This document shows, one piece after another, positions 11,110 to 44,815 of a DNA stretch of 64,000 nucleotides (positions are counted from its first letter, which is position 1; each line of letters begins with the position of its first letter). The stretch is from Macrostomum lignano (taxonomy: Eukaryota). Where the stretch lies: contig NIVC01000151.1 of the NCBI GenBank assembly GCA_002269645.1, positions 744,001 through 808,000 of the forward strand, read 5' to 3'. A program made the position numbers and the translations under genes. The notes beneath the pieces were generated by a model. The model saw only the letters and a list, made by a program, of their open reading frames with translations, was not told the origin of the DNA and did no database searches.

Positions 11110-14100
11110 ATGAAAAATCTTAAAACCCTTCTTATCTCAGCAAATGTAGGATCATTGTTTGATGATGTAAGTGCTATTGCTGATTGAGGCAAGTAAATTT
11201 TAGTATGATCATCATGGTTGATTGATTTATTTAATATAGGTTCACCTTGTTTTTAATAGAAATTCATTAAAACATTAAAACATTAAACAACAATCTAGTT
11301 AATAACTGATGATGTCATTGTCATTAATTTAGGTTTGTTATTTGTGTTTTTTAGTTCATTTTTAAACTAATAGAGTATTTTTGTGTTTATAACTAAACTA
11401 TTGTATAGATATAATTTTCATGGATTTTTACTAGCAGCTAATTTGCATCAGACTTTTAACTCCTAACCTTAATCAGAAATAAATAAGTTTATGTAATTAT
11501 TTATATATTTTGCTGCATATAATTTCACACAACCAAGTGCATATTTATTTTGTCTTGTTCATATTACATCCTTATAAACATCTGGATTTGCTATAAATCT
11601 TTACAACCATACCTTCTCCATGGCAAAACCTTCAAATTCTATAAAATATTTAAATCAATCTTCTAGCAGATGTAAAAAATTATAACAATTGTTTTAAATT
11701 CTTGAACTCTACTGCCTGTCCTCCCTATCTCTAGAATCACATTTCAAATTTTAGCCCGAGAATCTCTTCAAGAAGTGGCTGAATCAGTTCTATCAGGTGC
11801 GTTGTTTAAAACAAATAAAAATTATGCTGCTTGTTTAAAACTTTAAGCTATACTCGTGAAGCGAATCGCACCATCGCCCACCTTTGAGACGAGAACCGCG
11901 GGCCTGGTGTGAATTGCGTCACTTGCGGCTCTGAGATCTGAGAAAAGTTGCCCACTGGTTTCCGGGGTGGAAACTTTAACATTTTGCTGAGGGTATTTGA
12001 TATCTGGATGTCAAGAGTGCACAAACTGCCAATTATGCAGGTCGTCAGGGACAAAGACCCCGACTTCATCGCTCTGCACTGCCAGGAGGTCGGCGGTAAA
12101 AACTTTGCCCAGTCAATGCCGAACGTGAAAAAGTGGATTCAGTAAGATTACTGTAATGATTGATGATCGGTAGGCGAGCAGACTGATTGATTGATGATCA
12201 ATGGGCGAGCAGATTGATTGATTGATTGATGATCGATGGGCGAGCAGATTGACTGATTGATTGATGATCGATGGGCGAGCAGATTGACTGATTGATTGAT
12301 GATCGATGGGCGAGCAGATTGATTGATTGATTGATGATCGATGAGAAGGAGATTGATTGATTGATGATCGGTGGGCGAGCAGACTGATTGATTGATGATC
12401 GGTGGGCGAGCAGATTGATTGATTGATTGATGATCGATGGGCGAGCAGACTGATTGATTGATGATCGATAGGCGAGCAGATTGATTGATTGATGATCGAT
12501 GGGAAGGAGATTGATTGATTTATTGCTTTAGTAAGGAGTTAGTTGATTTTGATAGATATTGGCATTATCAATGACTCACCTGTAATCAATTCTGCAGAGA
12601 TCTCCTGGCGTCGCCAGACCTAAAAAGTTATGACAGAGTTCGCATATTCCTAGACGAAGACTTCAAAACTGCTGAAACCTTCACGGTTCGTGCTGGCTCT
12701 GAGTCTGTTGTGGACCACAGAAATGAGAATCACCCATTCCATAGACAGAACAGAGCCATGACCCTCATAGAGCCACGATCCTCACGCACAGACTCACAAA
12801 GTCTACAGAGCTATAAGCTTATAACCGACATCACCCATAGATATATCGCCAACCGCACCCATATAGCCATGACTCACTGATCTCACAGAGCCATGACTCA
12901 CTGATCTCACAGAGCCATGACTCACTGATCCCACAGAGCCATGACTCACTGATCCCACAGAGCCATGACTCACTGATCCCACAGAGCCATGACTCACTGA
13001 TCCCACAGAGCCATGACTCACTGATCCCATCCCTCCACAGGCCCTGGGCTCGCTCTACTTCGTACACTCGCGAGTTGCTGACATCCGCATCTGGGACTTC
13101 GCCAGCTCCGACTTTGTCAACGTTAAAGACACCAAGGTGAGTCTGGGAGCTCTCGTGACGGACATTCAGGTTTATTTTGAACCCAACTGAGAACCCATGG
13201 TATTGATAATTATTGAAAATCTCACCCTGACCCACACTGAGAATCTCACCCTGACCCACACTGAGAATCTCACCCTGACCCACACTGAGAATCTCACCCT
13301 GACCCACACTGAGAATCTCACCCTGACCCACACTGAGAATCTCACCCTGACCCACACTGAGAATCTCACCCTGACCCACACTGAGAATCTCACCCTGACC
13401 CACACTGAGAATCTCACCCTGACCCACACTGAGAATCTCACCCTGACCCACACTGAGAATCTCACCCTGACCCACACTGAGAATCTCACCCTGACCCACA
13501 CTGAGAATCTCACCCTGACCCACACTGAGAATCTCACCCTGACCCACACTGAGAATCTCACCCTGACCCACACTGAGAATCTCACCCTGACCCACACTGA
13601 GAATCTCACCCTGACCCACATTGAGAAACTCACCCTGACCCACACTGAGAATCTCACCCTGACCCTGACCCACACTGAGAATCTCACCCTGACCCACACT
13701 GAGAATCTCACCCTGACCCACATTGAGAATCTCACCGTGACCCACACTGAGAATCTCACCCTGACCCACATTGAGAATCTCACCGTGACCCACACTGAGA
13801 ATCTCACCCTGACCCACACTGAGAATCTCCTCCTGACCCACACTGAGAATCTCACCCTGACCCACACTGAGAATCTCACCCTGACCCACACTGAGAATCT
13901 CACCCTGACCCACACTGAGAATCTCACCCTGACCCACACTGAGAATCTCACACTGACCCACACTGAGAATCTCACCCTGACCCACACTGAGAATCTCACC
14001 CTGACCCACACTGAGAATCTCACCCTGACCCACACTGAGAATCTCACCCTGACCCACACTGAGAATCTGACCCTGACCCACACACTGAGAATCTCACCCT

Positions 14101-17100: not shown

Positions 17101-19491
17101 CCCTGTGGAATTCCCCTCGGCTCAGCTCCCCAATTCCCCTGTGGAATTCCCCCCGGCTCAGCTCCCCAATTCCCCTGTGGAATTCCCCCCGGCTCAAGCT
17201 TCCGTTTTTTCTTGCACAGGCGGTCGCGGACGGCGCCGAGCGGCGGGAGCAGTCGGACAAGAGCGGCCGGCCGAGCCGCGTCGACTTCCTGGCCGCCGGT
17301 AACGGCGAGAACGGCGGCTGCCTGCTGTCGGTGGGCAAGAAGCTGTTCGAGCGGCGCTCGGACAACGGCGCTAATGAGTTCTATGAGAACAAGAACTGCT
17401 GGGTGAGACTGTGCTGAGTGCATGATGTGCGAATGGTGTGGGACTGATGTATGAATTATGTGTTAATGATGTGCGACTGATGTGATAATTATGTGACTGA
17501 TGTGATAATGATAAATCAGATGATGAGATGATGAATGATGATAATATGAATTATGTGATAACGATGTGTGACTAATGTGATAATGATGTGTGACTGATGT
17601 GATAATGATGTGCGAATGGTTGATAATGATGTGCGAATGGTGTGTGGCTGAAGCACTTACATCACTGCATGGCCGCAGCTCCCCGCATACCTCACTGCCG
17701 CCCCCATCGCAGCTTAACGAACTCGACTTCGAGCTGAAATCGTTCGACCAGCACCTGTTTGAGTTCCCCGTGACCTTCCCGCCGACCTACCCGTTCAGCG
17801 AGGACTGCCAGGCGCCGGGCGCGGCCACCGACTACATGGCCACCCGCCTGCCCGGCTGGTGCGACCGCGTGCTCTGCAGCCACTCCGCCCGGCGCGCCCT
17901 GCTGTGCCCGCCAGACCAGCCGACTCAGTACGCCGTCCTCGGCCTGGACGACTGCCTGGGCGACCACAAGCCCGTGTTCCTCTCCACCCTGCTGTGCACC
18001 GCGGCAGATGCCGAAGGTAAGGATCAGCAAAGTTGGAGTTCCGATGGTCCACCAGGCTGTTTGTGTACACCTGTAGCTGTGTTGTCGGTAGCTGGTGCAC
18101 CCTGTAGCTGGTGCACCTGTAGCTGGCACACCTGTAGCTGGTACACCTGTAGCTTGTACACCTGTAGCTGGTGCACCTGTAGCTGGTACACCTTTACATG
18201 TAGCTGGTACACCTTTACATGTAGCTGGTACACCTGTAGCTGCATGGTACACCTGTAGCTGGTACATGTATTACTTGAAGACTGAGTACTTTAAAGAATT
18301 TCTAGAATCGAACCAGTATAGCCCGAGTCTGGAGGTCAGGGAGTAATTAATGAACCAGTGGCAAGCACTAGACTGGTGTTTTGGTGCATTTATCGTACAT
18401 ATGTACTTTTCTCAGCATTGAGTGTGTTGCCAGTTGCTACCCAAAGCCTTAGTCCGCATTGCCTAAACAGATGACTAAACATTGATTGATGACATTCTCT
18501 TTCAGAAGAAAGCCACAGTGAGCTGTGACCGAGTAGGTTTTTGCTTTTTCTGCCTCCCAATTTACTCCCGCCCTAATCTGTACTTTGCTTCTCTCCTCTT
18601 CTGTTTTCCTCAATTGTTTTCTTAGAGTTTTTAACATTTAGTTTACTTGCTGTAGCATCTCAAGGGTCTTCTATTATTGATTGGCAGCTAATTGTCTGAG
18701 CTGGCCTGCTGGAGTGCCGGCAACTTGAGGCTCGCCTTGAGTTCGCACACCATTAAGTCGCAAACAGCATCATGCTGTACTTTTATTGGATTTTGACTGT
18801 CTTGAATTTTATGCTGACTTTATTCAACTCTGTCTGTCTCTTCTCCCTCCCCCGCCTGTCTCCTTCCCTCAGTGCCTGTCTTCTTCCCTCACCGCCTGTC
18901 TCCTTCCCTCACCGCCTGTCTCCCCTCACCGCCTGTCTCCTTCCCTCACCGCCTGTCTCCTTCCCTCACCGCCTGTCTCCTTCCCTCACCGCCTGTCTCC
19001 TTCCCTCACCGCCTGTCTCCTTCCCTCACCGCCTGTCTCCTCCTTCCCTCAGTGCCTGTCTCCTTCCCTCACCGCCTATCTCCTCCCCTCCCCTGCCTGT
19101 CTCTTCCCCTCACTGCCTGTCTCTCCCCCCTCCTTCGCCTGTCTCCTCTCCCGCTCCTCATGTCCCTCTTCCTCAAAGAGTATTCTTAATTATGTTATCT
19201 TAATTCCCATGCGGATGTGACTGCTAGCCTTCAGTGAGATTCTTAGTGGCATGCAGTGTTCTGCTAGATGCCAATTTCTCAGACAAACCGCTTGCCTTCC
19301 TCCCCCCCCCAACAGCCGATGCCGCCGGCTGCATCCTGGACCCCGCCGACATGCCGTCCCCGCCGCTACTCAGCCGGCTGCTCGACCAGCCGGGCGTACA
19401 GGTGAAGCTGACGGACCGCAACGGGGCGGTGTACGCCCACGTGCGCCGGGACGGCACCACAATCTGCGTGTTCAGGGAGACTGCGGTGTGA
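11110..19491 (+). CDS. INPP5A: Type I inositol 1,4,5-trisphosphate 5-phosphatase, 11 exons, about 459 aa
   Basis: Exons 11110-11166, 11755-11796, 12041-12141, 12598-12685, 13041-13136, 15627-15698, 16202-16318, 16813-16956, 17220-17402, 17713-18016, 19316-19491. All GT-AG and phase-consistent. Motifs LLISANVGSLFDD, FIALHCQEVGGK, WSRKGYMRTRW, NVHLFHDDSNL, FGDFNFRLD, PPTYPFSED, PGWCDRVL, GDHKPVFL. Confidence 0.95.
12160..12525. repeat. GATT-rich minisatellite (gatcgatgggcgagcagattgattgattgat), INPP5A intron 3
   Basis: About 11 variable-length tandem copies. Confidence 0.9.
12760..13030. repeat. 24-bp minisatellite (gactcactgatcccacagagccat) abutting the exon 5 acceptor
   Basis: Tandem copies, each containing cccacag|ag, similar to the real acceptor ccacag|gc. 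Confidence 0.9.
13218..14262. repeat. 24-bp minisatellite (ctcaccctgacccacactgagaat), about 43 copies
   Basis: Highly homogeneous tandem array in INPP5A intron 5. Confidence 0.95.
14745..15525. repeat. 28-bp minisatellite (cccagcaactgaggatctgggaggctgg)
   Basis: Tandem array in INPP5A intron 5. Confidence 0.95.
15694..15855. repeat. 16/12-bp minisatellite (gtgtgttgtctgccat) starting at the exon 6 donor
   Basis: The unit mirrors the junction caat|gtgagttgtctg. Confidence 0.85.
15893..16110. repeat. 31-bp minisatellite (cacctgggctcatgtacacctggtgctagcc)
   Basis: About 7 copies, intron 6. Confidence 0.9.
16455..16785. repeat. 24-bp minisatellite (cagttatccagtagtcacagacgg)
   Basis: About 14 copies, intron 7. 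Confidence 0.9.
17008..17195. repeat. 36-bp minisatellite (ggctcagctccccaattcccctgtggaattccccc...)
   Basis: About 5 copies, intron 8. Confidence 0.9.
18090..18265. repeat. 15-bp minisatellite (cacctgtagctggta)
   Basis: Tandem copies, intron 10. Confidence 0.85.
18845..19135. repeat. 20-bp pyrimidine-rich minisatellite (ttccctcaccgcctgtctcc)
   Basis: Tandem copies, intron 10. Confidence 0.9.
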
Positions 19492-21150: not shown

Positions 21151-21660
21151 ACAAGATGACGACTTGACAATCAAAAACCTGGCTACGCCCCTTGTTGGGA
21201 AACGTTTTTCGTGATTAATTTCATCAGTTTTGAGTAGCAGACCAGCAAATTTGATAAGCCACGCACATTTATAGAAAAATAGAACGGCTATTGCACTGTG
21301 CCCGCTGTATTTTCTCCTTAACGATCAAACATCAAGCAAGATGAAGTCCTTGCTTTTAACTGTGTTCGTTCAATAAAGCCATGCAAGTACATGTAGGTCA
21401 CAACCAAACAGCTGGCTCACTGGGACCCTGGCCAATATCAAATCATTTGTACATGAGAGAAATGCAAAAGTAGTCAGAACATTAGCACTCATCTATACTG
21501 ACTGAATGCAAAAGTTACGGTAATAGAAAATTGATAATTGCCAAAATAAACAAGAGATTAGAATACAAGCAACTTCGCTCAAGTGCCGAGTGCACAACAC
21601 TAAACTGCTGTATTCTGGGCGGAAGAGAAAATGTGCAAATTTGCGAAATAGAAATAGGAA

Positions 21661-22280
21661 ATCCCAGCTCAGTCAGTGAGGGAGCCACCGGACATCCCAG
21701 CTCAGTCAGTGAGGGAGCCACCGGACACCTCAGCTCAGTCAGTGAGGGAGCCATCGGACACCCCAGCTCAATCAGTGAGGGAGCCACCGGACACCTCAGC
21801 TCAGTCAGTGAGGGAGCCACCGGACATCCCAGCTCAGTCAGTGAGGGAGCCACCGGACACCCCAGCTCAGTCAGTGAGGGAGCCACCGGACATCCCAGCT
21901 CAGTCAGTGAGGGAGCCACCGGACATCCCAGCTCAGTCAGTGAGGGAGCCACCGGACATCCCAGCTCAGTCAGTGAGGGAGCCACCGGACACCTCAGCTC
22001 AGTCAGTGAGGGAGCCATGGGACACCCCAGCTCAGTCAGTGAGGGAGCCACCGGACATCCCAGCTCAGTCAGTGAGGGAGCCATCGGACACCTCAGCTCA
22101 GTCAGTGAGGGAGCCATCGGACACCTCAGCTCAGTCAGTGAGGGAGCCATCGGACACCCCAGCTCAATCAGTGAGGGAGCCACCGGACACCCCAGCTCAG
22201 TCAGTGAGAGAGCCACCGGACATCCCAGCTCAGTCAGTGAGGGAGCCACCGGACACCCCAGCTCAGTCAGTGAGGGAGCC
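21661..22280. repeat. 33-bp minisatellite overlapping the NEMP stop codon, about 19 copies
   Basis: Unit atcccagctcagtcagtgagggagccaccggac. The last copy supplies the final 18 nt of the CDS (GSLTD*). Confidence 0.95.
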
Positions 22281-24785
22281 GTCGTCCGAGTCGTCCAGAA
22301 CTGGCCGCCTCTGCCGAATCTGAGTCGCGGACGGCGCCATGCGGGCGCCTCGTGCACATCCGTTGCCGTTCACTGCGGGGGCGCGCGTCGAACCGGGCGT
22401 GGCCTTCCATCCGTTGGGAGCCGGCGAAGAGGTGGTGGCGGCGGGGGCCACGGTCGAACTGTCGCTGTCCGAAGACAGGTCCGTGGAGTCCAGCAGCGAC
22501 TGCAGGTGGCTGCCGCCCTGAAGTGCGCCGGGTGTTTGAGCTGTGAGCTCCGCAATACTTGGCAGAGCATCCGCAGCGGTAACTGCGTCAGACTCTTGCG
22601 CAAAGGCCCCTGGTTCAATTCCGTGCGCAGCTACATTTATGTGGGGCTGTCGTGTGTATGAGTGCATGCCTCTGTACAGTATTGGCGTGCCTGTATGTGC
22701 TCGGAATGCGCATGCGGAAGCGCAGAATGGCCTCACCGTAGCTCCGCGGTGCCCACAGCTGTTCTGCGAGTATTGATTTTATACTTATACTCGTGCCTGC
22801 TTGCCTGCCGTATCCATGTGTGAGGAGGTGCACAGGCCTCATTGGCACAGCAGTGACAGCACTCACCTGCACAAACTGGGCGAACCCGGCCGGGTCCCGC
22901 AGGCGCGCGCTGACCCGCCAGGCGTCGCAGTCGGGGCTGGCGCAGTGCCGCCGCAGCTGCTCCAGCGCCACCTCAGTGCACTCGCGGCCCTGCCTGCTGA
23001 AGTCTTCCTCGGTCAGCCAGCGCCGCCGGTGCAGCGGTCGCAACCAGCGGGGGCAGCAGCGCCAGAAGGCCGACTCTAGGCGCTGCCACAGCGCCCAGCG
23101 CAGGCGTAACATCGAGACCTTCGCGACGGCCGACACGGCGGATGTCAAGAAGCCGCGCAACAGGATTGCCACCGCTGCCACCCCCGATACCTGCCAGAAC
23201 TGAGGGCGGAGGGGAGCTGATAAGCGTCAGAACGGAAATCGAGCAGGTGGAAGGGGATCAGGCAGGTGGAAGGGGATCAGGCAGGTGGAAGGGGATCAGA
23301 CAGGTGGAAGGGGATCAGACAGGTGGAAGGGGATCAGGCAAGTGGAAGGGGATCAGGCAGGTGGAAGGGGATCAGACAGGTGGAAGGGGATCAGGCAGGT
23401 GGAAGGGGATCAGTAGTGGGAATCGGACAGAGGTCATACCTGACAGGAGGCCAGCATGCAGAGGAGCGCCAGGGCCCTCAGCGCGATCTCCAGCAGGCGG
23501 AAAGTCCGCTGGCTGGTGACGGGCCCCAGCCAGTAGCAGATGACCACGGAGAGGCCGGCAGAGCAGGCCAGGTAGGCAGACAGAGTCGTCCAGTGCCGCT
23601 CGGCGAGTTCGGCGGCGTGCGCGGCGGCGAAAGTCCAGATGGCGCCGGCGCCGGCAGCGCTGGCCAGGAAGAGCGGCCAAAAGAGGCGGCGCAGCGGCAG
23701 CAGGCGGTTGAGCAGCAGCACCAGGAGCGCCGCAGACAGCAGGACGCCGGCCATGGCGCCGCCAGCGTAGTGGAAGGTGGCCCGGCGGCTGAGTTCGGGC
23801 GCCCAGGCCAGCAGGCCGCAGCCGATGACGAATGCGGCAAGGCGGGCGAGGCTGAGGCCGGCGACGGCGCGCACAGTGTAGACGGCGGCGTCGCCTTCTG
23901 CTGCGGTGCCGGGTTGGGGAGATTGAGGAATATCCCCTGACTGGGATTAGTATCCCCGAATAGGGAATACGAGTAACATCTCTACGGGTAGTTCAGGCGT
24001 AAAATTCATATATTTGGTATAGATAATCCTCAAATTAGTGATTCATATCTACTGTTTATAGTCGTATAGATCGAAATCCCTAGATTGGGGATCAATATCC
24101 CTAGATTGGGGATCAGTATCCCTAGATTGGGGATCAGTATCCCTAGATTGGGGATCAGTATCCCTAGATTGGGGATCAGTATCCCTAGATTGGGGATCAA
24201 TTTCCCAGGTTCATCCCTGCAGCCAAGATCCCCAGCACCATGGGCGGCAGGCCCTGCTGCGGACGCACCGATGGCCCTCGGCGGCTCCTCCTTGCCTTCG
24301 ATCAGCACGCCGGCGCAGGACGGCTCCAGCAGCGGCAGCGGCAGCGCCAGCGGGCCGAGAAAAGCCCGCCGAGCGGCCATCAGCGGCTCCCAGAAAAATC
24401 CGTCACGGAAGGCGGCCGGCAGGAGCAGCCGGTGGAACAGCGAGGCCTCCGAGGCCTGCCGCACCCGGTCAGTAACATCGCTCTCGTTCGTCCCGAGGAA
24501 GAGGCGCGGCGCCGCCGAATTGGACGACGCCAGCGAGATGCGCAGCGAGGCGCCGTGGAAGGCGAAGCGCGGGTGGGCGGGCAGGCCGGGCGAGCAGAAC
24601 ACGCAGAGCCGCTGTGTCCAATCGCCAGCCAGCGAGACCGAGTCGCGCCTGATGGTGATTGGCTGGCTGCCAAGTTGGAAGATCAGCGGCCTATCGCGCT
24701 GAGCCGCCAGAGTGCCGTCGAGGCGATGAAAAAGCAGCAGCGACAGCAGCAGCAGCAGCAGCGGATTCGGGCACCGCCAATTCAT
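22263..24785 (-). CDS. NEMP1: Nuclear envelope integral membrane protein (NEMP/TMEM194 family), 4 exons, about 521 aa
   Basis: Exons 24785-24269, 23900-23440, 23199-22867, 22517-22263, phase-consistent. Signal peptide; FHYAGGAMAG; VICYWLGP; RRWLTEEDFSRQGRECTEVALEQLRRHCASPDCDAWRVSARLRDPAGFAQFVQGGSHL matches the NEMP BAF-binding C-terminal box. Confidence 0.92.
23240..23412. repeat. 19-bp minisatellite (ggcaggtggaaggggatca), NEMP intron 2
   Basis: Tandem copies. Confidence 0.9.
24075..24200. repeat. 21-bp minisatellite (atccctagattggggatcagt), NEMP intron 1
   Basis: About 6 copies. Confidence 0.9.
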
Positions 24786-28071: not shown

Positions 28072-28127
28072 CTAACCCTAACCCTAGCCTAACCCTAACC
28101 CTAACCCTAACCCTAACCTAACCCTAA
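28072..28127 (-). repeat. Interstitial telomeric repeat (TTAGGG)n, about 9 units, inside a degenerate about 480-bp duplicated unit (about 27900-28850)
   Basis: ctaaccctaaccctagcctaaccctaacc...; a decayed equivalent lies at about 28501-28546. Confidence 0.85.
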
Positions 28128-28999
28128 AGCATTGAAATTTCAGTAATTCTCTCTAAGAGTCATTATAGCACTACTACAGCATTATAGCGATTCCCTGCAA
28201 GCCTCAACATCGTAGGGATTCCCAAATGAATCTCTTAACTTCGACATGAAGCTTATTTTATTTTTTACATTACGCTTTTTTATCAGCGATCCCTCGCCTG
28301 AGGAGGCATCAAATAATGTAATAAAAAGTTTTCAATAAACTACATGTAGCTTCTGACTTTAGCCTTGAAATCTCATTTATACCCCCGTGAGCCTTGACAT
28401 CTCAGCTATTCCCCCCGTAAGCCTTGACATGTCAGCAATGGCCCCCATAAACCTTGAAATCTAAAAAATCCCCTGTTAACCTTGAAACCCGATAAAATAT
28501 AACCCTCAACCCACACCTGACCTAAACCTAACTTTAACCCAACCTAAAGCCTTGAAATCTCAGCAATTCTTCTCCCCTAAGCCTTGACATTTTAGTGATT
28601 CCTTCTTTAAGAATAACAGCACTATAACGATTTCCACCAAGCTTTGGCATCGTAGCAATTCCCAAATGAATCTTTCAACTTCGACATGACTTTTATTTTA
28701 TGTATACATAGTGCTACTTTTATTTTTTACATAACTCTTCTTCTATCAGCGCCCCCCCCCCCGTGACATGAACTTTGAAGTAGCTTCTGACTTTTGCTTT
28801 GACATCTCAGAAACCCCCCCGTAATCTCAGTTATTCTCTGAGAGCCTTTACGTCTCAATTTTTCTCCCCAGCACAGCATTATAATTGCATTTAATTTTTA
28901 CATGAACCCTTCATGTCTGACATGACGTTTTTTTATTCTACCGTGACGCTTCTTAATTTTTTAAATGACACTTTCATTAGTTTTTAAATGAGGCTTCTA

Positions 29000-30255
29000 T
29001 GATTTTTTCTTGACGCTTCTATGATTTTTACATGACGCTTCTATGATTTTTATATGACGCTTCTATGATTGTTTACATGACGCTTCTATGATTGTTTACA
29101 TGACGCTTCTATGATTGTTTACATGACGCTTCTACGATTTTTTACATGACACTTCTATGATTGTTTACATGACGCTTCTATGATTTTTTACATGGCGCTT
29201 CTATGATTGTTTACATGACGCTTCTATGATTGTTTACATGACGCTTCTATGATTGTTTACATGACGCTTCTACGATTTTTATATGACGCTTCTATGATTT
29301 TTTAAATGGCGCTTCAATGATTTTTTAATGACGCTTCTATGATTTTTTACATGACGCTTCTATGATTTTTTACATGACGCTTCTATGATTGTTTACATGA
29401 CGCTTCTATGATTGTTTACATGACGCTTCTATGATTGTTTACATGACGCTTCTATGATTGTTTACATGACGCTTCTATGATTGTTTACATGACGCTTCTA
29501 TGATTGTTTACATGACGCTTCTATGATTGTTTACATGACGCTTCTATGATTGTTTACATGACGCTTCTATAATTGTTTACATGACGCTTCTATGATTGTT
29601 TACATGACGCTTCTATGATTTTTTACATGACGCTTCTATGATTTTTTACATGACACTTCTATGATTGTTTACATGACGCTTCTATGATTTTTTACATGAC
29701 TCTTCTATGATTTTTTAAATGACGCTTCTATTATTTTTTAATGACGCTTCTATGATTGTTTAAATGACGCTTCTATGATTGTTTACATGACGCTTCTATG
29801 ATTGTTTACATGACGCTTTTATGATTGTTTACATGACGCTTCTATGATTGTTTACATGACGCTTCTATGATTTTTTACATGACGCTTCTATGATTGTTTA
29901 CATGACGCTTCTACGATTTTTATATGACGCTTCTATGATTTTTTAAATGACGCTTTTATGATTTTTTAAATGACGCTTCTATTATTTTTTAATGACGCTT
30001 CTATGATTGTTTAAATGACGCTTCTATGATTGTTTACATGACGCTTCTATGATTTTTTACATGACGCTTCTATGATTGTTTACATGACGCTTCTATGATT
30101 TTTTAAATGACGCTTCTATGATTTTTATATGACGCTTCTATGATTTTTTACATGACGCTTCTAAGATTGTTTACATGACGCTTCTACGATTTTTTAAATG
30201 ACGCATCTATGATTTTGTAAATGACGCTTCTATGATTTTTACATGACGCTTCTTT
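29000..30255. repeat. 23-bp minisatellite (tgacgcttctatgattgtttaca), about 54 copies
   Basis: Long AT-rich tandem array. Confidence 0.95.
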
Positions 30256-36120: not shown

Positions 36121-36240
36121 TATCAGGGCGCGCATCTGCCTATACTGTCTTAATGTCGTGGAGTATAGTGGTGCAGATCCGGGCTTTTCGTCAAGTCATC
36201 GAAGAGGCGCGGATACGCTAGCAGATTCTGATTGTTATCT
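36121..36240 (+). mobile_element. Short RTE non-LTR fragment (inverted relative to 38434-38560)
   Basis: Shares gcatctgcct...gtcgtggagta...ggcttttcg...catcgaagaggcgcggatacgctagcagat...ttatctt with the minus strand of the RTE relic. Confidence 0.55.
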
Positions 36241-37183
36241 TATCAGGATTGGCTTATTCCCGATTCTAGAACAGTGAGAATCAGTTTGAAACTTTTAATT
36301 TTTCTTGTTTCTTTTTCCAAGCTCAAAACTAACTGTTTCTTGAACGAAAATTTATCGTTTCACTGCTGTGTTCTATAGTTTCTAATATGGAAGCTATGTT
36401 ACCGATTCTTTTGAGCTATATTTCATTCTTCGAGGCTTGTCTTGTCTCTAAATAATTAAATAAGGAATACAGTAGCTACCCGAAATGGCGAAAATTCTTC
36501 ATAATTATTTATCAAATAATTCATATTTGTGAATTGAAAATACGCACACTGTATACAGCTGTGCTAAGTTGATGGTTGTCATTTTCCCACACAGGTACTG
36601 TTGTAGAACCATGCAATTATTCTGGTTTATATAGTAAATTTAGAGAAAAGCCTCGTCATTAAGTGAAAGATAAAGTCAGAACATGATCATCATTCACCCA
36701 TCATAGCTCCACTCTATGTATTTAAGGTGCGTGTGCAAAATACACTCAGCTGTGCATAAATGGCCATCTGGCTTACTGGCACAGTGCGTACGAATTCATG
36801 AGCAAATCATGCGTTTGTTGTTGTCAAATGGTTTTGCATGCCTAATGTACATACATCTAATACAACTAAGCAATTGGGGACATCAGCAGTTCTCAGGTGT
36901 GCTGCTTCTTAAAGTCTATTGAAAAAACATTGAAAAAAACAAATATCTGTTTAAAGAAGCCATTAGTTAATTTCGTTTCATTGCCATAGACGTATTTGTG
37001 GCATCAACGCCAGGGTTTTTTACACAAACAAAACTGGACTGTGGAGACAGGTTCGATGGGCTGAGTCTCAAGCGCAGCAGTTTAAGTGAGAGCTGCAGCA
37101 TTTGAGCTAATTTCCGAATCTGCTAGATACGAGAGCACCACGTTTTTCACTGGCATAGGACCACCCGAAACGCCGCTACAGCA

Positions 37184-37549
37184 ATGAGCTCGTATTTCGC
37201 ACTTCTGGCAGTCGGCCTGATGAGCGCCGCTGCCCTGCTGACCAAGGCCGACGCCATCAGTACTGGCGAGATGCTCTTCGAACTAGCCAATGACGGCCAC
37301 CACCATGACGACCATCACCACCACCATGACGGTCATCACCACCACCATGAAGGCCATCGCCACCACTATGATGGTTATCACCACCACGACGACCATCACC
37401 ACCAACATGACGGTCATCACCATCACCATGACGGTCATCTCCATCACCATGACGACCATCACCACCACCATGTCGGTCATCACCATCATCATGACGGTCA
37501 TCACCATCATCATGACGGTCATCACCACCATGACGACCAGCATCACTAA
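37184..37549 (+). CDS. Secreted His/Asp-rich repeat protein, paralog 1 (121 aa)
   Basis: Signal peptide MSSYFALLAVGLMSAAALLTKADA, then ISTGEML, then about 12 HDG/HDD-H4 7-aa repeats. Clean ATG and stop; AATAAA downstream at about 37858. Confidence 0.85.
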   Translation: MSSYFALLAVGLMSAAALLTKADAISTGEMLFELANDGHHHDDHHHHHDGHHHHHEGHRHHYDGYHHHDDHHHQHDGHHHHHDGHLHHHDDHHHHHVGHHHHHDGHHHHHDGHHHHDDQHH

Positions 37550-38049
37550 TATCGTGGTCACTGAATTCAAGCCAGAAGACTGAAACGTGAAAGACATTCG
37601 CATGTCAAAGTTTTATTCCGCTTCCTCTAATCCACTTGTTATTGTGCGTAAGCCAATCAGTCCAATTATCCACACACAAATCATAATCCTAACACAACAG
37701 AAAACTCTATATTGATCGCACCTTCATCTAAGCATCTTTCCGCCTTTTATTTCAATTCTAGTGTCCGCTGTTGCATGATTACATCAAACTGCTAATCAGT
37801 CGTGCATGTTGAAGCTAACCAATTATTTGCTTTGATTCTGGTATCGATGCACTTGAAATAAATAAAAAATTGAAGCAAATTGAGAAAATTAAATCAGAAA
37901 TCTGTAATTTAAATCAGAAAAAAATGCTGTGTCAGTTCTTGCGTTTAAATAATATTTAAATTGCCATAGTCGCGAGGCCCTGAATACTGTTGATGGAGCT
38001 GGGGATAGTGGAAAGGATTAGTTATAAGTTGATAGAAGGAACGACCATT

Positions 38050-39060
38050 GACAGAAACATAAAACCAGTTAGAGTCGCCGATGGCACAACAGGTCGCTTG
38101 GACGCTCTGGGCCGGTGCGATGATACAGTGCAGGGCACGCGTTGGAACTCGTTTGTCGCCGATCTTGAAGTCGACGAGTAGCAGGCCAGCGTGCGCCGCT
38201 TGATCTACAGCTCTACAGCAGTCTACAGCTGTCAGCGTCCAGAAGCCTCGGCGTTGTAAAGCAGAACGGTCTCGATTGGCCTTCCGGTGTTGACACGCAG
38301 TTTCGTGTCACAGCACATCGCCATGATGGCGGAAAGCAGCTGATTTGGCACCATTATTGGGAGCGCAGCACGTGTACTTATCCACCGACGAATACATAAT
38401 CTACAAATCTGTGAATCTGTATCTGCGAATCCCCAAGATAACATCAGGATCTGCTAGCGTATCCGCGCCTCTTCGATGCCTCAGCGAAAAGCCAGAATCT
38501 GCGCCACTACTCCACGACCGAAGGCAGATGCCCTAGCTGATACTCCTCAAGGTTGTGATGCGCGGCTTCTGAGGAATAGCTGCGATGTATTCCGTGGTCC
38601 ATTCGTTGGGCGCCGATCCTCGCCGAAGAGCACGCGGCCGGTTCATTACTCTGGCGACTTAACTAGCGTCAGGACCCAGCGCTTTCCTGCCCGGCGACAA
38701 TTGGGCAAGCCTCAAAACGTCGGCTGTGCTTACCGGGACTATGCTAAAGCTCTCCTCTTCCGGCGACGGCGTCTCGGGCTGTATCCGGCGGTGTCTCCGA
38801 CAGCGTCGGATTGTCTGGCAGCGGGAGTGTCAGCGCGTTCACGATCGCGGCGAAGAGTTCGTGCAGCTCATTCTGCGCCCGTCAGCTGTAGTGTCGCCGG
38901 AACGACGAGGCGACAGTCTCGGTTCGATCAGCGCTCCAACTCCTATACGGCCCCGAAAGTCCCCCAGCGCCCAGGTCCTCATGGTGAAGTCCCAGGTCAG
39001 CCTTGATAGACACCTCCTGCGGTGCAATGATATCGCAGCTTAGGTCAAACGCTAGCTTCG
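38050..39060 (-). mobile_element. Degenerate, internally deleted RTE-clade non-LTR retrotransposon
   Basis: APE-like CDIIAPQEV at the 5' end, then YLG, DTKLRV...IETVLLYNAE and ALYHRTG...PSDLL..RRL post-RT motifs, with stops and frameshifts. Confidence 0.6.
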
Positions 39061-39314
39061 CCTGCAGCTCAGGTTAAGACTGCAGATAAAAAATCAGGAA
39101 ATAATCAGTCCCTCATTAAACAAATTCATGACAAACTTTTTGTGCCATCGCCGAATCTGCATGGCAGGCCAAATCATCCGCGTTGAGTGGTACTGCCCAC
39201 AGCCGGTGATGCAGGTGCTACTGGTGACGCTGCAGGCACCCTACCGGCGAAGACTGGCGCGCACTCGGCGCTTTGTCCCATTTTCTTGTTGTTCTTGTAT
39301 GGATAGAAAAAGCA

Positions 39315-39580
39315 AAGACCAGTGGATAGAGGCAAGGACCAGTGGATATAGGTATAAGGACCAGTGGATATAGGTATAAGGACCAGTGGATATAGGTATA
39401 AGGACCAGTGGATATAGGTATAAGGACCAGTGGATATAGGTAAGGACCAGTGGATATAGGTAAGGACCAGTGGATATAGGTAAGGACCAGTGGATAGAGG
39501 CAAGGAACAGTGGATAAGAGGCAAGGACCAGTGGATAGAGGCAAAGACCAGTGGATAGAAGCAAGAACCAGTGGATAGAA
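39315..39580. repeat. 20-22-bp minisatellite (aggaccagtggatataggtata)
   Basis: Tandem copies between the two His-rich genes. Confidence 0.9.
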
Positions 39581-40072
39581 TGACAGATTTATTTGTTAGC
39601 CACTATTTTTTGGAAAACCACCCAGTCTTTAAATCTACGAGTATGACAAAAAAGCGAATTCTTGATGTTGACTAAAAGTACAAGCGGGCCCAGATACTAA
39701 ATGATCAAGATGGATCGCTCAAAAAAGTCTTTTTCGAAACTGTTTGCATGCTTACCAGCTATATTGAATCGTTGTACTTTTCTGAATTCAGCGATTCAGC
39801 TACGCGGGCTGGGACAAGCAGATAATAGTCTATGGCCAAAGTTTCGCTCGGCATAACAGTTCAGGCCTTAAGCTTGAGAAATTGCGCCTACAGGCCAACG
39901 GTTTCAGCCACAGACGAAAGTGTCACTGCCGCACACAGCATAAGAGGCCACAGGCCGGAGCGGTGGTTGGGGCAGCCTCTCAGGTTTAGTGAGCAAGCGA
40001 CAGCCAAAGCAAGTGGTGGGCAGATACTCTCAAGTTGCAGCATCGTACCAGCAAGCTCGATCAACCGCCAGC

Positions 40073-40786
40073 ATGACATCGACTATCGCAATCCTAACAT
40101 TCGTTGTGACGAGCCTGGCAGCGCTGGCGGTCAGCACGGAGGCCCTCAGCGCTGGCGAAATGCTGTTGAGGAATCAACTGAGGACCCGGCAAGACGGACA
40201 TGACCATCATCTGCATGACGGACATGACCATCATCCGCACGACGGACATGACCATCATCTGCACGACGGACATGACCATCATCTGCACGACGGACATGAC
40301 CATCATCTGCACGACGGACATGACCATCATCTGCACGACGGACATGACCATCATCTGCACGACGGACATGACCATCATCTGCACGACGGACATGACCATC
40401 ATCTGCACGACGGACATGACCATCATCTGCATGACGGACATGACCATCATCTGCATGACGGACATGACCATCATCCGCACGACGGACATGACTATCATCT
40501 GCACGACGGACATGACCATCATCTGCACGACGGACATGACCATCATCCGCACGACGGACATGACCATCATCTGCACGACGGACATGACCATCATCTGCAC
40601 GACGGACATGACCATCATCTGCACGACGGACATGACCATCATCTGCACGACGGACATGACCATCATCTGCACGACGGACATGACCATCATCTGCACGACG
40701 GACATGACCATCATCTGCACGACGGACATGACCATCATCTGCACGATGGACATGACCATCGCATGCACGACGGACATCATCATTGA
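40073..40786 (+). CDS. Secreted His/Asp-rich repeat protein, paralog 2 (237 aa)
   Basis: Likely start ATG at 40073: MTSTIAILTFVVTSLAALAVSTEA signal, LSAGEML, RTRQ, then about 24 near-identical HDGHDHHL units (24 nt). Confidence 0.85.
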   Translation: MTSTIAILTFVVTSLAALAVSTEALSAGEMLLRNQLRTRQDGHDHHLHDGHDHHPHDGHDHHLHDGHDHHLHDGHDHHLHDGHDHHLHDGHDHHLHDGHDHHLHDGHDHHLHDGHDHHLHDGHDHHLHDGHDHHPHDGHDYHLHDGHDHHLHDGHDHHPHDGHDHHLHDGHDHHLHDGHDHHLHDGHDHHLHDGHDHHLHDGHDHHLHDGHDHHLHDGHDHHLHDGHDHRMHDGHHH

Positions 40787-41294
40787 GCATGCCAAGTTCA
40801 TCCTTATTGGCCAAAAGACAGCAAGCGCCATCAGAGACTGCTCACGCATAGACAGCAGCATTAACAAAAGCTCCAAATCTTGAGTCTGTGTAAGCATGCT
40901 GTCCTTAGACAGCAAAATCCCCACAAAAACCACAAAAAGGCTAGAAAAACTCCCAGTAATTTCTTTTGCAAACGCGCTATACGAAATTTAGTCAACAGAT
41001 GATCCCAAGTGCTAATTTTACCTGTAAGTTCGTCATGATTTTTCCCTGATCTTATCAATTAAAATTTGATGGAAATAATTCTAGTTGAATGTTTTCAAAT
41101 AAATATGGATCATAATTCAAGGAGACATAATTAATTAAATAAAAACATGAGGAATTTATGACAAACAGTGACTGACAATGTGCGTCTGCTTGACTTCATT
41201 TTAGTGCACAATATATTCCTTCTGGGTCTTGCTTGAAACGCACATTGGCGTATGAACAAGACTAGCGTTGTAGGCTGAGGCTTGTGTTGGTGCC

Positions 41295-42093: not shown

Positions 42094-43958
42094 TCACATC
42101 ATGCTGTTCCCCTCAAACGGCTTGCACCTGGCCGAGCTCAGGTAGTCGCGAACTCTCGGCCGGTCCTCCATTCCGGCCTTGAACTCGGCCAGCCTCGGAC
42201 AGTCGCCGATGCTGCGGGCCCAGGCGGCCGGAAACTGCGACTCCGCAGCACGCAGCACGTGCAGCAGGCAGAGGTCGCAGTAAGTCACCCGCCGGCCAAC
42301 GACAAACCGGCCGCCGCCAGAAGCGTCCCAGTTGGCCGCGTTGAAGCTGAGCACCTGCTCGAAGTGGCGCAGGAACTTGGGCAGCCGGTGCCGCTCAAAA
42401 TAGTCAATGTAGGGCCGCGTCTCCGCCTCCTGGTCGAAGTACGACTCGTAGAAGTTGCGGCCGTGGAAGGCCAGCCGGCCCTCCGTGATGAAGTCCATGA
42501 CGGTGGCGCAGGTCTGGTCGGCCCGCCAGCGGTCCGGCTCGCCATCGGGCAGCAGGCCGAGCCTCTCGGCCAGGTAGCGGCAGATGGTGGCCGTCTGGCC
42601 CAGCTCGAAGTCGCCTGGGAGGTGAAATATCGGCCAACATCAGTCCGAAGTAGCCTCAGTGCTGCAGCTGCAGCTCTGCTGTCGCCTTGTAAAAGTGCAG
42701 TAAGAGATGCCAGCACCCGCCGTGCATCCAACAGAATACAGAATTTACCTCTACAAAACTCCTCTCTATTTAACTTAAGACTTTGGTAAACAATAGTGTA
42801 AACTTTGGGATAACTTAAATTAATTTGTGTCCCAATGTTCGATCGAATGCTTTATCATGGGCACAGCAACCTCACCCTGCTTTATCATTGGCACAGCAAC
42901 CTCACCCTGCTTTATCATGGGCACAGCAACCTCACCCTGCTTTATCATGGGCACAGCAACCTCACCCTGCTTTATCATGGGCACAGCAACCTCCCTCACC
43001 TTGCTTTATCATGGGCACAGCAACCTCACCCTGCTTTATCATGGGCACAGCAACCTCACCCTGCTTTATCATGGGCACAGCAACCTCCCTCACATTGCTT
43101 TATCATGGGCACAGCAACCTCCCTCACCCTGCTTTATCATTGGCACAGCAACCTCACCCTGCTTTATCATGGGCACAGCAACCTCACCCTGCTTTATCAT
43201 GGGCACAGCAACCTCACCCTGCTTTATCATGGGCACAGCAACCTCCCTCACCTTGCTTTATCATGGGCACAGCAACCTCACCCTGCTTTATCATGGGCAC
43301 AGCAACCTCACCCTGCTTTATCATGGGCACAGCAACCTCCCTCACATTGCTTTATCATGGGCACAGCAACCTCCCTCACCCTGCTTTATCATTGGCACAG
43401 CAACCTCACCCTGCTTTATCATGGGCACAGCAACCTCACCCTGCTTTATCATGGGCACAGCAACCTCCCTCACCCTGCTTTATCATGGGCACAGCAACCT
43501 CACCCTGCTTTATCATGGGCACAGCAACCTCACCCTGCTTTATCATGGGCACAGCAACCTCACCCTGCTTTATCATGGGCACAGCAACCTCCCTCACCCT
43601 GCTTTATCATGGGCACAGCAACCTCACCCTGCTTTATCATGGGCACAGCAACCCCACCCTGATTTATCATGGGCACAGCAACCCCACCCTGCTTTATCAT
43701 GGGCACAGCAACCTCACCCTGCTTTATCATGGGCACAGCAAACACAGGCCAGCCAATTTTCTGCTGACACTTGAAGTCCAGGTAGATGGCCTCGGGGTCG
43801 CAGTGCTCGCTGAACTCCTGCCCAGCTTCCACCAGGATGAGGCGGATGAACTCCGCTCTGCCAGGCACGTTGGGCCAGTAGCGCAGCTGCCACTTCGGGC
43901 TCGGCTCTTCTTCACCGCCCGCTGTGTCAGCCGAGGAATTTTCGCCCGGCGCCGTCAT
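42094..43958 (-). CDS. Glutathione S-transferase, 2 exons, about 253 aa
   Basis: Exons 43958-43718 and 42614-42094. Motifs LRYWPNVPGRAEFIRLIL, FAVPMIKQG|DFELGQTATICRYLAERLGL, VTYCDLCLLHVL, PRLAEF...RPRVRDYLSS. Confidence 0.9.
42848..43740. repeat. 30-bp (some 34-bp) minisatellite = 23 nt of GST exon 1 end + 7 nt of 5' splice site, about 28 copies
   Basis: Minus-strand unit tgctgtgcccatgataaagcagg|gtgaggt. Confidence 0.95.
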
Positions 43959-44815
43959 TTGCTTCAAAACAGTTGCTGAGGCCGTGGCGGCAGCGAACTT
44001 CGCGAGCGAGGCCGAGTTTGGCTGCCCAAATGCGCTTTTATGGCCAATACTGGAAACTCGACACCCAGGCTGCTGCATGCGGTCGCCTACCTGTCAGAGA
44101 TACCTGCAGCTCATTAGCTCGAGCTGTCATGCACGATGGCCGTGGAGTTGAAGTGAAAATGTATAGGAAATTTCATCCTTTAATTTGTTCTGTCAGCGTC
44201 AGGACAGTCAACAGTGATTAGAGAAAAGCGATATACATGTTTGTATGTAAGCTCTAATTATCCAATTTGCAAACTCCGTCATTACCAGTGCAGACTCAAG
44301 GTGAGATTAAAGCGGCAGGCATCCAAGGGTTGGAATGGCAGTAGCAGAGAGACAAATGGCAGTCATAAAAATCATTCTTTCAAATCGGAGCCAATTTATG
44401 CATTTGACAGTCAGTCAGGTAGGGTATATTTGATAAAAACTTTACATTGCTTTCTTACGCATGCAGCAGAGTATCTTTTTTACGGACAGAAATCGGACTA
44501 AAAACTGACAAGCACAGGCTTGCTCTGCTGCTTCTGTTCAAACAAATACTGAGCAAGCAGACAGCCGCCAGATAGCAAAGGGAGAAATACTCTTCACGCA
44601 GCTATAAAAAGTACAGCGGACGGTCAGAGAGGAACCCGGCTCCAAAATAAAATTTGGATACCTACGTGTCCATCAGTAAAAAACAGCGATGGAAAAGTGT
44701 ACAGTACAGTGATGCCCAGCTTACCCAAAGCACCCGCTGAGCAATGGGCCAAAAAGGCTAATACTGCAGAGTCGCATAAAACAGAAATTCTCCCCCCTGA
44801 GATTTGGTGGGAAAT

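What the first reader, a model, noticed from the sequence alone, without database searches (positions are those of the whole stretch)
37184..40786. Tandem pair of secreted His/Asp-rich repeat proteins with a shared (I/L)S(T/A)GEML post-signal motif
Seen: two same-strand intronless ORFs, each with a signal peptide, a conserved A-[IL]-S-[TA]-G-E-M-L segment and a mature part of at least 50% His plus Asp/Gly (7-aa HDGHHHH versus 8-aa HDGHDHHL units), with no Cys. Established: His-rich secreted proteins bind Zn/Cu and harden or coacervate structures (Nereis jaw Nvjp-1, squid beak HBPs, fluke vitelline protein C). Inference: an uncharacterised family for metal-based sclerotisation (stylet, bristles, eggshell), gland secretions or metal defence.
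Basis: partly seen in the sequence, partly recalled or inferred. Interest (0 to 1): 0.7.

Follow-up and report, generated by a model that had tools for sequence, protein, structure and literature searches.

The report
Orphan secreted His/Asp-repeat protein pair
Two neighbouring, related open reading frames in a Macrostomum flatworm genome probably encode small secreted, unstructured proteins that are about half histidine. They are likely metal binders, but they have no detectable relatives and there is no evidence yet that they are expressed.

Summary
ORF1 (37184-37549, 121 aa) and ORF2 (first ATG 40073, to 40786, 237 aa) lie on the + strand. Each has a signal-peptide-like N-terminus, a shared A-[IL]-S-[TA]-G-E-M-L segment at the predicted cleavage site, and an in-frame His/Asp/Gly array. 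The arrays are 13 degenerate units of about 7 aa and 24 near-perfect 8-aa units. Neither protein has Cys.

The two copies are homologous from exactly the ATG: 65% ungapped nucleotide identity over 96 nt, 8.6 SD above background. Their flanks are unrelated.

The window is Macrostomum lignano or a close relative (NEMP exon 98% identical). It is packed with minisatellites that give long chance ORFs, so only the unique N-termini argue for genes.

No homologue turned up in the word-indexed protein collection (5.8 billion clusters), 1.84 billion representatives, Pfam, PDB or JGI metagenomes. Neither ORF is in the annotated proteomes, and expression could not be checked.

AlphaFold2 predicts an N-terminal helix and a disordered remainder. 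Calculated charge flips from about +25 at pH 5.5 to -17 and -46 at pH 8.1.

The best reading is an orphan paralogue pair of secreted, pH-switching, multivalent metal-binding proteins. The biological role is untested, and a non-coding artefact remains possible (about 25%).

The parts
37184..37549 (+). ORF1, a complete single-exon reading frame of 121 aa (stop TAA at 37547-37549)
   Evidence: first ATG after the in-frame stop at 37124
37184..37255 (+). ORF1 predicted signal peptide MSSYFALLAVGLMSAAALLTKADA (h-region FALLAVGLMSAAALL; A-D-A at -3 to -1)
   Evidence: heuristic only, SignalP not available
37253..37276 (+). ORF1 conserved segment AISTGEML spanning the predicted cleavage site (mature N-terminus ISTGEML)
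37292..37546 (+). ORF1 His/Asp/Gly array: 13 degenerate units of 5-7 codons, consensus GAC GGT CAT CAC CAC CAC CAT (DGHHHHH)
37857..37866 (+). Two overlapping AATAAA candidate polyadenylation signals, 308 and 312 nt after the ORF1 stop
   Evidence: expected often by chance in AT-rich DNA
40073..40786 (+). ORF2, a complete single-exon reading frame of 237 aa from its first ATG (stop TGA at 40784-40786)
40073..40144 (+). ORF2 predicted signal peptide MTSTIAILTFVVTSLAALAVSTEA (T-E-A at -3 to -1)
   Evidence: heuristic only
40142..40165 (+). ORF2 conserved segment ALSAGEML spanning the predicted cleavage site
40193..40783 (+). ORF2 array: 24 near-identical 24-nt units GACGGACATGACCATCATCTGCAC (DGHDHHLH) plus a terminal DGHHH
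41058..41103 (+). Candidate polyadenylation signals: ATTAAA 272 nt and AATAAA 312 nt after the ORF2 stop

Best explanation
The two ORFs are old tandem paralogues of a lineage-restricted Macrostomum gene. Each encodes a small secreted protein: a cleavable signal peptide, a short conserved mature N-terminus ([IL]S[TA]GEML) and an intrinsically disordered His/Asp/Gly repeat tail.

Inferred mechanism:
- Each 7-8-residue unit offers 4-5 imidazoles and 1-2 carboxylates. The tail would therefore be a high-capacity, multivalent ligand for divalent transition metals (Zn2+, Cu2+, Ni2+).
- In ORF2 the two Asp per unit would exactly balance one bound M2+.
- Because almost all titratable groups are His and Asp, the protein would be a soluble polycation in an acidic secretory granule. 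On release into seawater (about pH 8) it would become a polyanion with deprotonated, metal-competent imidazoles.
- At that point it would either chelate metal or be cross-linked by it into an extracellular secretion or material. Candidates are a gland product such as shell or cement gland secretion, eggshell or copulatory structures.

Shown here: the ORFs, their homology starting at the ATG, the signal-like N-termini, the composition, the predicted disorder, the calculated charge switch and the absence of relatives.

Inferred only: expression, secretion, metal binding and the tissue or role.
For: - Homology starts exactly at the ATG and is the best match in the window, while 5' and 3' flanks do not align.
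- Frame 1 is the only forward frame open in both copies and gives the highest BLOSUM62 score of the six frames.
- The signal-peptide heuristic passes both ORFs and only 2 of the other 114 ATG-ORFs. One of those is exon 1 of the NEMP gene, a plausible true positive.
- Both frames stop immediately after the last repeat unit.
- Both ORFs are GC islands (51-59%), with lower GC on both sides of ORF1 and downstream of ORF2 (26-44%); the 270 nt upstream of ORF2 are already 53-55% GC.
- Both have AATAAA 308-312 nt downstream of the stop.
- AlphaFold2 gives helix 2-43 at pLDDT about 90 and the rest at pLDDT 45-50.
- Charge is +24 and +29 at pH 5.5 and -17 and -46 at pH 8.1, with pI 6.3 and 6.0.
- Precedents for His-based pH and metal switching in secreted marine materials are in PMC9999432.
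- A 'histidine-rich glycoprotein precursor' transcript is 727-fold female-biased alongside eggshell genes in Schistosoma japonicum (PMC4851400).
- Secreted tail-region genes of Macrostomum evolve fast and often lack detectable homologues (PMC7336406).
Against: - No transcript, peptide or orthologue was found. Exact products are not on record.
- No protein in the searched collections, including the UniRef M. lignano entries that the NEMP control did hit, shares the N-terminus.
- The selection test on the 32 N-terminal codons is not significant (P about 0.12; differences per codon position 12/8/14).
- The window is full of minisatellites that yield long ORFs in several frames, and all three + frames are open across both arrays.
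- ORF2's array is nearly perfect and so carries no information on constraint.
- The composition lacks the Gly, Tyr and hydrophobic partners of known His-rich structural proteins.
Confidence: 0.45

Rival explanations
1. This is a non-coding artefact. A duplicated segment with a CAY/GAC-rich minisatellite happens to be open in the His frame, in a genome where minisatellites routinely create long ORFs. The ATG and the hydrophobic start are fortuitous, or are relics of a dead gene.
For: - TRF returns 59 rows in 64 kb, and most of the 43 ORFs of at least 150 aa sit on arrays, often in several frames and on both strands.
- Both His arrays are open in all three + frames and in minus frames.
- No annotated protein, homologue or transcript was found.
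- The protein-level conservation test is not significant.
- The 3-nt indels in ORF1 can arise by (CAC)n slippage without any selection.
Against: - Homology begins at the ATG itself, with no similarity upstream.
- At 35% nucleotide divergence both copies keep the ATG, an uncharged 15-16-residue hydrophobic core, small residues at -3/-1 and the GEML motif, with synonymous changes in it (GAG/GAA, CTC/CTG, AGT/AGC).
- A third of simulated random mutation sets at this divergence introduce a stop.
- The crude signal-peptide rule passes only 2 of the other 114 ATG-ORFs, about 2%.
- Both frames end right at the array end.
Confidence: 0.25
2. The proteins are real and secreted, but they act as soluble metal buffers or sequestrants. 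Possible roles are detoxification or storage of Zn, Cu or Ni from sediment and diatom food, or antimicrobial metal starvation. They would not be a building block of any material.
For: - High Asp with almost no aromatic or hydrophobic residues, no Lys and no Cys predicts a very soluble polyanion at pH 8, not a self-assembling protein.
- The only database hit of the repeat is the His/Asp stretch of a CobW/COG0523-type metallochaperone (PF02492 + PF07683). This shows the same composition is used for metal handling.
- From my own knowledge, not tested here: Helicobacter Hpn, Candida Pra1 and the Gly/His-rich insect antifungal peptides.
Against: No expression site is known, no induction data exist, and there is no homology to any of these proteins.
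Confidence: 0.2
3. The proteins are the unidentified negatively charged releasing-gland product of the duo-gland adhesive organs. They would be stored as polycations at acidic pH and released as polyanions at seawater pH. There they would mask the Lys/Arg-rich cohesive protein Mlig-ap1 and detach the animal.
For: - The flatworm adhesion model postulates an unknown negatively charged secreted substance, and heparin mimics it (PMC9229212).
- ORF2's mature form carries about -46 net charge at pH 8.1 in 213 residues.
- Both are small secreted proteins, consistent with the small releasing-gland vesicles.
Against: This is purely an argument from charge. There are no expression data. A plain acidic protein would do the job without about 50% His. 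The published tail-specific screens that I could search do not mention such a protein.
Confidence: 0.05

Closest known systems
Nereis jaw protein Nvjp-1 and Glycera jaw MTP (secreted His/Gly-rich, Zn- or Cu-hardened marine materials)
   Same: Secreted and largely disordered, with His-rich short repeats. Behaviour switches between acidic storage pH and seawater pH, and metal ions trigger assembly (PMC9999432).
   Different: Nvjp-1 has 27% His and 36% Gly with GYG/DYG Tyr motifs. The ORFs here have 47-59% His, 10-12% Gly, 17-24% Asp and at most 3 Tyr. There is no sequence homology, and no jaw-like mineralised or metal-hardened structure has been documented in Macrostomum.
Squid beak His-rich proteins (HBP-1 to -3)
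   Same: Architecture of a signal peptide, a non-repetitive N-terminal part and a tandem short-repeat tail. His acts as a pH switch near pH 6.5.
   Different: HBPs have only 10-16% His and rely on Tyr, Phe, Ala and Gly (GHGXY, GAGFA) for coacervation. His is their only charged residue, whereas the ORFs here are strongly anionic at neutral pH and lack aromatics.
Plasmodium falciparum histidine-rich protein 2 (HRP2) (own knowledge)
   Same: A small secreted protein made almost entirely of short tandem His/Asp-containing repeats. It is lineage-restricted, lacks Cys and binds divalent metals and haem.
   Different: It has Ala-rich AHH/AHHAAD repeats, is exported into the host erythrocyte and shares no sequence. 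There is no homologue of the GEML N-terminal segment.
His/Asp stretches of COG0523/CobW-type metallochaperones and bacterial Hpn-type Ni-storage proteins
   Same: The same H-D-G-H composition. This was the only database hit for the repeat (P0001, 57% identity over 20% of ORF2).
   Different: Those are cytosolic and attached to a GTPase domain (PF02492/PF07683). The ORFs have a signal peptide and no domain.
Flatworm eggshell-associated His-rich proteins (Fasciola vitelline protein C, own knowledge; Schistosoma japonicum 'histidine-rich glycoprotein precursor')
   Same: They come from the same phylum, are secreted and His-rich, and are co-expressed with eggshell precursors.
   Different: The sequences could not be fetched for comparison. 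Fluke eggshell proteins are DOPA/Tyr-based and quinone-tanned, whereas the ORFs here have almost no Tyr. Macrostomum has no vitellaria.

Membership tests
Secreted His-rich metal-hardened structural proteins (Nvjp-1 / MTP / HBP class) | N-terminal signal peptide | tested here: met
   The h-region and -3/-1 rule pass both ORFs, and only 2 of the other 114 ATG-ORFs in the window. AlphaFold2 gives an N-terminal helix at pLDDT about 90. No SignalP run was possible.
Secreted His-rich metal-hardened structural proteins (Nvjp-1 / MTP / HBP class) | His-rich short tandem repeats in a disordered body | tested here: met
   47-59% His, periods 21 and 24 nt; pLDDT 45-50 over the repeats.
Secreted His-rich metal-hardened structural proteins (Nvjp-1 / MTP / HBP class) | Gly-rich matrix with Tyr/Phe partners for coacervation and cross-linking | tested here: not met
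   Gly is 10-12%. Tyr is 3 residues in ORF1 and 1 in ORF2. There is no Lys or Cys, and Asp is 17-24%, against Nvjp-1 and HBP compositions.
Secreted His-rich metal-hardened structural proteins (Nvjp-1 / MTP / HBP class) | Presence in, and expression next to, a hardened metal-containing structure | not testable with these tools
   No transcriptome, proteome or elemental data for this species were reachable. Literature searches found nothing.
Secreted His-rich metal-hardened structural proteins (Nvjp-1 / MTP / HBP class) | Sequence homology to a member | tested here: not met
   No significant relatives in the word-indexed collection of 5.8 billion clusters, in 1.84 billion representatives or in PDB. 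The class is convergent in any case.
COG0523/CobW metallochaperones with a His stretch | CobW/HypB/UreG GTPase domain (PF02492) plus CobW C-terminal domain (PF07683) | tested here: not met
   Pfam gives no family for either ORF at E<=0.01. The hit P0001 matches only through its His/Asp linker.
Any curated protein family (Pfam-A) | A match to the conserved N-terminal segment or to the repeat | tested here: not met
   0 families for both ORFs.
Genuine protein-coding gene (as opposed to a minisatellite ORF) | Purifying selection at the protein level between the paralogues | tested here: inconclusive
   Frame 1 has the best BLOSUM score, but P is about 0.12 in both permutation nulls. Differences per codon position are 12/8/14. 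Only 32 alignable codons are available.
Genuine protein-coding gene (as opposed to a minisatellite ORF) | Transcript or annotated gene model | tested here: not met
   Exact products are not on record, and no protein shares the N-terminus. The NEMP control shows that UniRef M. lignano proteins are in the collection.

The most novel reading that the evidence does not exclude
The pair is a flatworm-specific 'charge-flip' secretory protein. It would be packed as a polycation in acidic granules and become, on exocytosis into seawater, either a Zn/Cu-cross-linked hardener of a reproductive structure (stylet or eggshell) or the long-sought polyanionic release factor of the duo-gland adhesive organ.
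Probability: 0.1. Interest if true: 0.7.

Novelty: new variant of a known kind. Interest (0 to 1): 0.35.

Why it matters
If the genes are real and expressed, they would be an unannotated orphan family in a genetically tractable flatworm model, where RNAi by soaking, in situ hybridisation and transgenesis are all available.

Their composition is among the most extreme His contents known for a secreted animal protein. It is also a simple, testable pH and metal switch (His plus Asp only).

That makes the family a convenient entry point to three open questions:
- How soft-bodied meiofauna harden copulatory or egg structures.
- How they handle trace metals.
- How they release temporary adhesion, where the releasing substance is still unknown (PMC9229212).

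The case also illustrates that repeat masking can hide low-complexity secreted genes in minisatellite-rich genomes. If the ORFs are not expressed, the finding is only an example of how such genomes generate convincing-looking ORFs.

Tried and rejected
1. A full-length ORF2 search of the 5.8-billion-cluster collection returned only a CobW-type protein, matched through its His/Asp linker. I rejected this as compositional.
2. An N-terminal two-sequence profile found no candidates in the word-indexed collection (two earlier attempts failed on parameter limits). In the 1.84-billion representative library it found one hit at E=3e-5, a 1268-aa tetratricopeptide-repeat protein matched in four stretches. 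I rejected this as spurious.
3. Exact-product look-ups for ORF1, ORF2 and the M. lignano NEMP protein returned nothing. No genomic context from other assemblies could be obtained.
4. A JGI metagenome scan with back-translated motifs matched 597 pattern stretches, none confirmed.
5. Pfam and PDB sequence searches found nothing apart from a weak compositional match to a carbonic anhydrase (E=0.0045), which I disregarded.
6. Rfam and tRNA scans of the window found nothing.
7. Literature searches for Macrostomum with histidine-rich, histidine, stylet or zinc terms, and for the peptide strings themselves, gave no relevant report.
8. A codon-level selection test on the N-termini was not significant. 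Repeat-variant analysis was uninformative, because ORF2 is near-perfect and ORF1's 3-nt indels are explained by slippage.
9. I considered that the GC-rich block between the ORFs (38000-39350) might be a third gene or a transposable element. The three minus-strand frames and the one long plus-strand ORF (38476-39006) had no Pfam hit, so it remains unexplained.
10. I considered ER retention, a membrane anchor and furin-type processing. There is no KDEL-like end, the h-regions are 15-16 residues long, and there is no RXXR or dibasic site (read directly from the sequences).
Full report
**Origin of the window**

The window is eukaryotic and very rich in minisatellites. Tandem Repeats Finder returns 59 rows, with periods mostly of 13-46 nt. 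GC content swings between 26% and 65%. No Rfam family or tRNA gene was found.

An exon-like ORF at 22615-23181 (-) carries a NEMP domain (PF10225, E=1e-15). It is 98% identical to a UniRef protein of Macrostomum lignano, a free-living marine flatworm (lineage). The window is therefore M. lignano or a very close relative or homeologue.

Other recognisable genes in the window:
- A 5-phosphatase-type exon at 17590-18258.
- A glutathione S-transferase on the minus strand. Its C-terminal exon is at 42094-42498 (PF14497, E=5.5e-16), and it is convergent with ORF2.

**The observation**

- ORF1 is 37184-37549 (121 aa).
- ORF2 should be read from its first ATG at 40073 (237 aa, ending at 40786). The ORF list extends it to a GTG, which does not apply in a eukaryote. 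No other ATG lies between the upstream in-frame stop and this ATG.

Both proteins begin with an uncharged hydrophobic stretch of 15-16 residues, followed by small residues at -3 and -1 (A-D-A and T-E-A). The shared segment AISTGEML / ALSAGEML occupies residues 24-31 in both. The predicted mature N-termini are therefore ISTGEML and LSAGEML.

Past the motif, the composition is as follows:
- ORF1: 58.9% His, 16.7% Asp, 10% Gly.
- ORF2: 47.1% His, 23.8% Asp, 12.1% Gly, 10.7% Leu.
- There is no Cys or Lys in either.

ORF1's tail is 13 degenerate units of 5-7 codons, with consensus GAC GGT CAT CAC CAC CAC CAT. ORF2's tail is 24 almost identical 24-nt units, GACGGACATGACCATCATCTGCAC (DGHDHHLH), plus a final DGHHH. 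Read side by side, the 8-residue unit is the 7-residue unit with an extra Asp codon after DGH and one His replaced by Leu. The arrays are therefore related as well.

A motif and His-density scan of all six frames finds no third copy in the window.

**Is it more than chance?**

ORF length is worthless as evidence here. Most of the 43 ORFs of at least 150 aa in this window lie on minisatellites, often in several frames and on both strands. All three + frames are open across both His arrays. The argument must therefore rest on the unique N-terminal parts.

1. Ungapped nucleotide identity between the two loci is 0.64, 0.55 and 0.70 in the three 33-nt bins starting at the ATG. It is 0.06-0.30 in the nine bins upstream and 0.24 in the bin after codon 33.
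2. The ORF2 start is the best match to the ORF1 start anywhere in the window on either strand (0.646 against a mean of 0.246, SD 0.046).
3. MAFFT finds nothing convincing in the 200 nt upstream or 430 nt downstream.
4. Frame 1 is the only forward frame free of stops in both copies. It also gives the highest BLOSUM62 score of the six frames.
5. Inside the motif, three of the five changed codons are synonymous (AGT/AGC, GAG/GAA, CTC/CTG).
6. A crude signal-peptide rule passes 4 of 116 ATG-ORFs of at least 60 aa. These are the two ORFs, exon 1 of the NEMP gene (a plausible true positive; NEMP's signal peptide is from my own knowledge, not checked here) and one other.
7. Both frames terminate immediately after the last repeat unit.
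8. Both ORFs are GC islands of 51-59%. GC is lower (26-44%) on both sides of ORF1 and downstream of ORF2, but the 270 nt upstream of ORF2 are already 53-55% GC.
9. Both have a purine at -3 of the ATG and an AATAAA 308-312 nt after the stop.

Against this, a permutation test for protein-level conservation over the 32 alignable codons is not significant (P about 0.12). Differences per codon position are 12/8/14. ORF2's array is too young to carry any signal, and ORF1's 3-nt indels can be explained by (CAC)n slippage.

I put the probability that these are real coding genes at about 0.7.

**Relatives**

None were found.
- Pfam gives no family for either ORF.
- The exact products are not on record.
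- Full-length ORF2 hits only the His/Asp linker of a CobW/COG0523-type protein.
- A profile of the two N-termini finds no candidate in the 5.8-billion-cluster collection. In 1.84 billion representatives it finds only a spurious tetratricopeptide-repeat protein.
- Nothing was confirmed in JGI metagenomes.
- PDB sequence searches give nothing meaningful.

The NEMP control hit a UniRef M. lignano protein and nothing else. M. lignano UniRef proteins are thus in the collection, and neither ORF (nor a close paralogue) appears among them. Read-level assemblies of this species do not seem to be in the collection, however, so lack of transcription is not shown. Genes made of tandem repeats are commonly lost to repeat masking (inference).

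No paper in the searchable library mentions a His-rich Macrostomum protein or these peptide strings.

**Physical properties**

AlphaFold2 (single sequence) models residues 2-43 of ORF2 as one helix at pLDDT about 90. The repeats have no secondary structure, at pLDDT 45-50. That fits a signal peptide followed by a disordered tail.

The predicted mature proteins are 97 aa (11.9 kDa, pI 6.3) and 213 aa (25.3 kDa, pI 6.0). Their calculated net charge goes from +24 and +29 at pH 5.5, through zero near pH 6.0-6.3, to -17 and -46 at pH 8.1.

**How it most likely works**

Dense imidazole and carboxylate arrays are the classic ligands for Zn2+, Cu2+ and Ni2+ (established chemistry). Each ORF2 unit, with four His and two Asp, could hold one M2+ and become electroneutral (inference).

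The charge flip predicts a soluble, self-repelling polycation in an acidic secretory granule. After release into seawater the protein would be a metal-competent polyanion. This is the same logic as in the His-based marine materials reviewed in PMC9999432, where a pH rise and Zn2+ or Cu2+ trigger assembly.

The composition departs from those materials, however. Nvjp-1 has 27% His and 36% Gly with Tyr motifs. Squid HBPs have 10-16% His and coacervate through Tyr, Phe and hydrophobic contacts, with His as the only charged residue. The ORFs here have almost no aromatic or hydrophobic residues and a large excess of Asp. Self-coacervation by deprotonation alone is thus unlikely. Either metal ions or a polycationic partner would be needed, or the proteins simply chelate metal in solution.

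I therefore commit to 'secreted, disordered, pH-switching multivalent metal binder' as the mechanism. I leave the biological role open between three options:
- A metal-cross-linked gland secretion or material. The flatworm precedent is a 727-fold female-biased 'histidine-rich glycoprotein precursor' listed among eggshell genes in Schistosoma japonicum (PMC4851400). Fasciola vitelline protein C is a further precedent from my own knowledge.
- Soluble metal buffering or antimicrobial metal starvation.
- As a long shot, the unidentified negatively charged releasing-gland substance postulated for flatworm temporary adhesion (PMC9229212).

The orphan status fits what is known of secreted tail-region genes in Macrostomum, which diverge quickly (PMC7336406).

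**Comparison and novelty**

The pair works like the known class of secreted His-rich repeat proteins. It fails membership of every concrete family tested: it has no homology, no Gly/Tyr matrix and no GTPase domain. I rate it a new variant of a known kind.

Interest is moderate. A specialist would not be surprised that a marine invertebrate has a His-rich secreted protein. The extreme His/Asp composition, the conserved mature N-terminus, the absence from annotation and the tractability of M. lignano make it a cheap and potentially rewarding target. Everything hinges on showing expression, which I could not do.

No step had to be referred.

Noticed in passing
window 36155-36241 and 38435-38518: A short dispersed repeat in inverted orientation brackets ORF1, about 0.9 kb from each end. 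It is 67-87 nt at 87-88% identity, and similarity is traceable over about 110 nt. It could be two copies of a small mobile element or the ends of one. ORF2 has no counterpart.
   Followed up: partly
window 38000-39350: A GC-rich block (50-65% GC) lies between the two ORFs, with only an Arg-rich 176-aa ORF (38476-39006, +). The three minus-strand frames and that ORF had no Pfam hit; the other plus frames were not scanned. It may be a decayed gene or element of unknown nature.
   Followed up: partly
window 39317-39577: A 20-nt minisatellite (GACCAGTGGATATAGGTAAG, 12.6 copies) sits about 500 nt upstream of the ORF2 start. It may lie in or near its promoter.
   Followed up: no
window 28072-28127: An interstitial telomere-like run (CCCTAA/TTAGGG, about 9 units) lies at the edge of a long AT-rich, repeat-filled stretch (28-37 kb) that includes a 57-copy 23-nt array at 28944-30253.
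   Followed up: no
whole window: Minisatellite density is extreme: 59 TRF rows, many arrays of 0.3-1.3 kb. These create most of the 43 ORFs of at least 150 aa, often in several frames and on both strands (for example 12831-14368, 21515-22661, 42825-43979). This is a general trap for ORF-based reading of this genome.
   Followed up: partly
window 22615-23181 and 24030-24785 (-): These are exons of a NEMP (nuclear envelope membrane protein) gene. The first is 98% identical to a UniRef M. lignano protein. The upstream exon starts with a signal-peptide-like MNWRCPNPLLLLLLSLLLF and runs on into an intronic 21-nt minisatellite.
   Followed up: partly
window 42094-44078 (-): A glutathione S-transferase gene is convergent with ORF2. 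Its C-terminal exon is at 42094-42498 (PF14497, E=5.5e-16). A probable N-terminal exon lies near 43560-44078, and a 30-nt minisatellite of about 29 copies (42848-43741) lies between the two exons, probably in an intron.
   Followed up: partly
window 17590-18258 (+): An exon-like ORF matches the C-terminal part of the endonuclease/exonuclease/phosphatase family 2 (PF22669, E=5e-8). It looks like an inositol polyphosphate 5-phosphatase fragment and is flanked by 11-21-nt repeat arrays.
   Followed up: no
window 4793-6178 (-): This is the longest non-repetitive ORF in the window (461 aa, Arg/Glu/Gln-rich). It has no Pfam hit and its identity is unknown.
   Followed up: no
window 37857-37866 and 41098-41103: AATAAA lies 308-312 nt downstream of the stop in both ORFs, although the 3' flanks do not align. 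This may be a coincidence or a conserved 3'UTR length.
   Followed up: no
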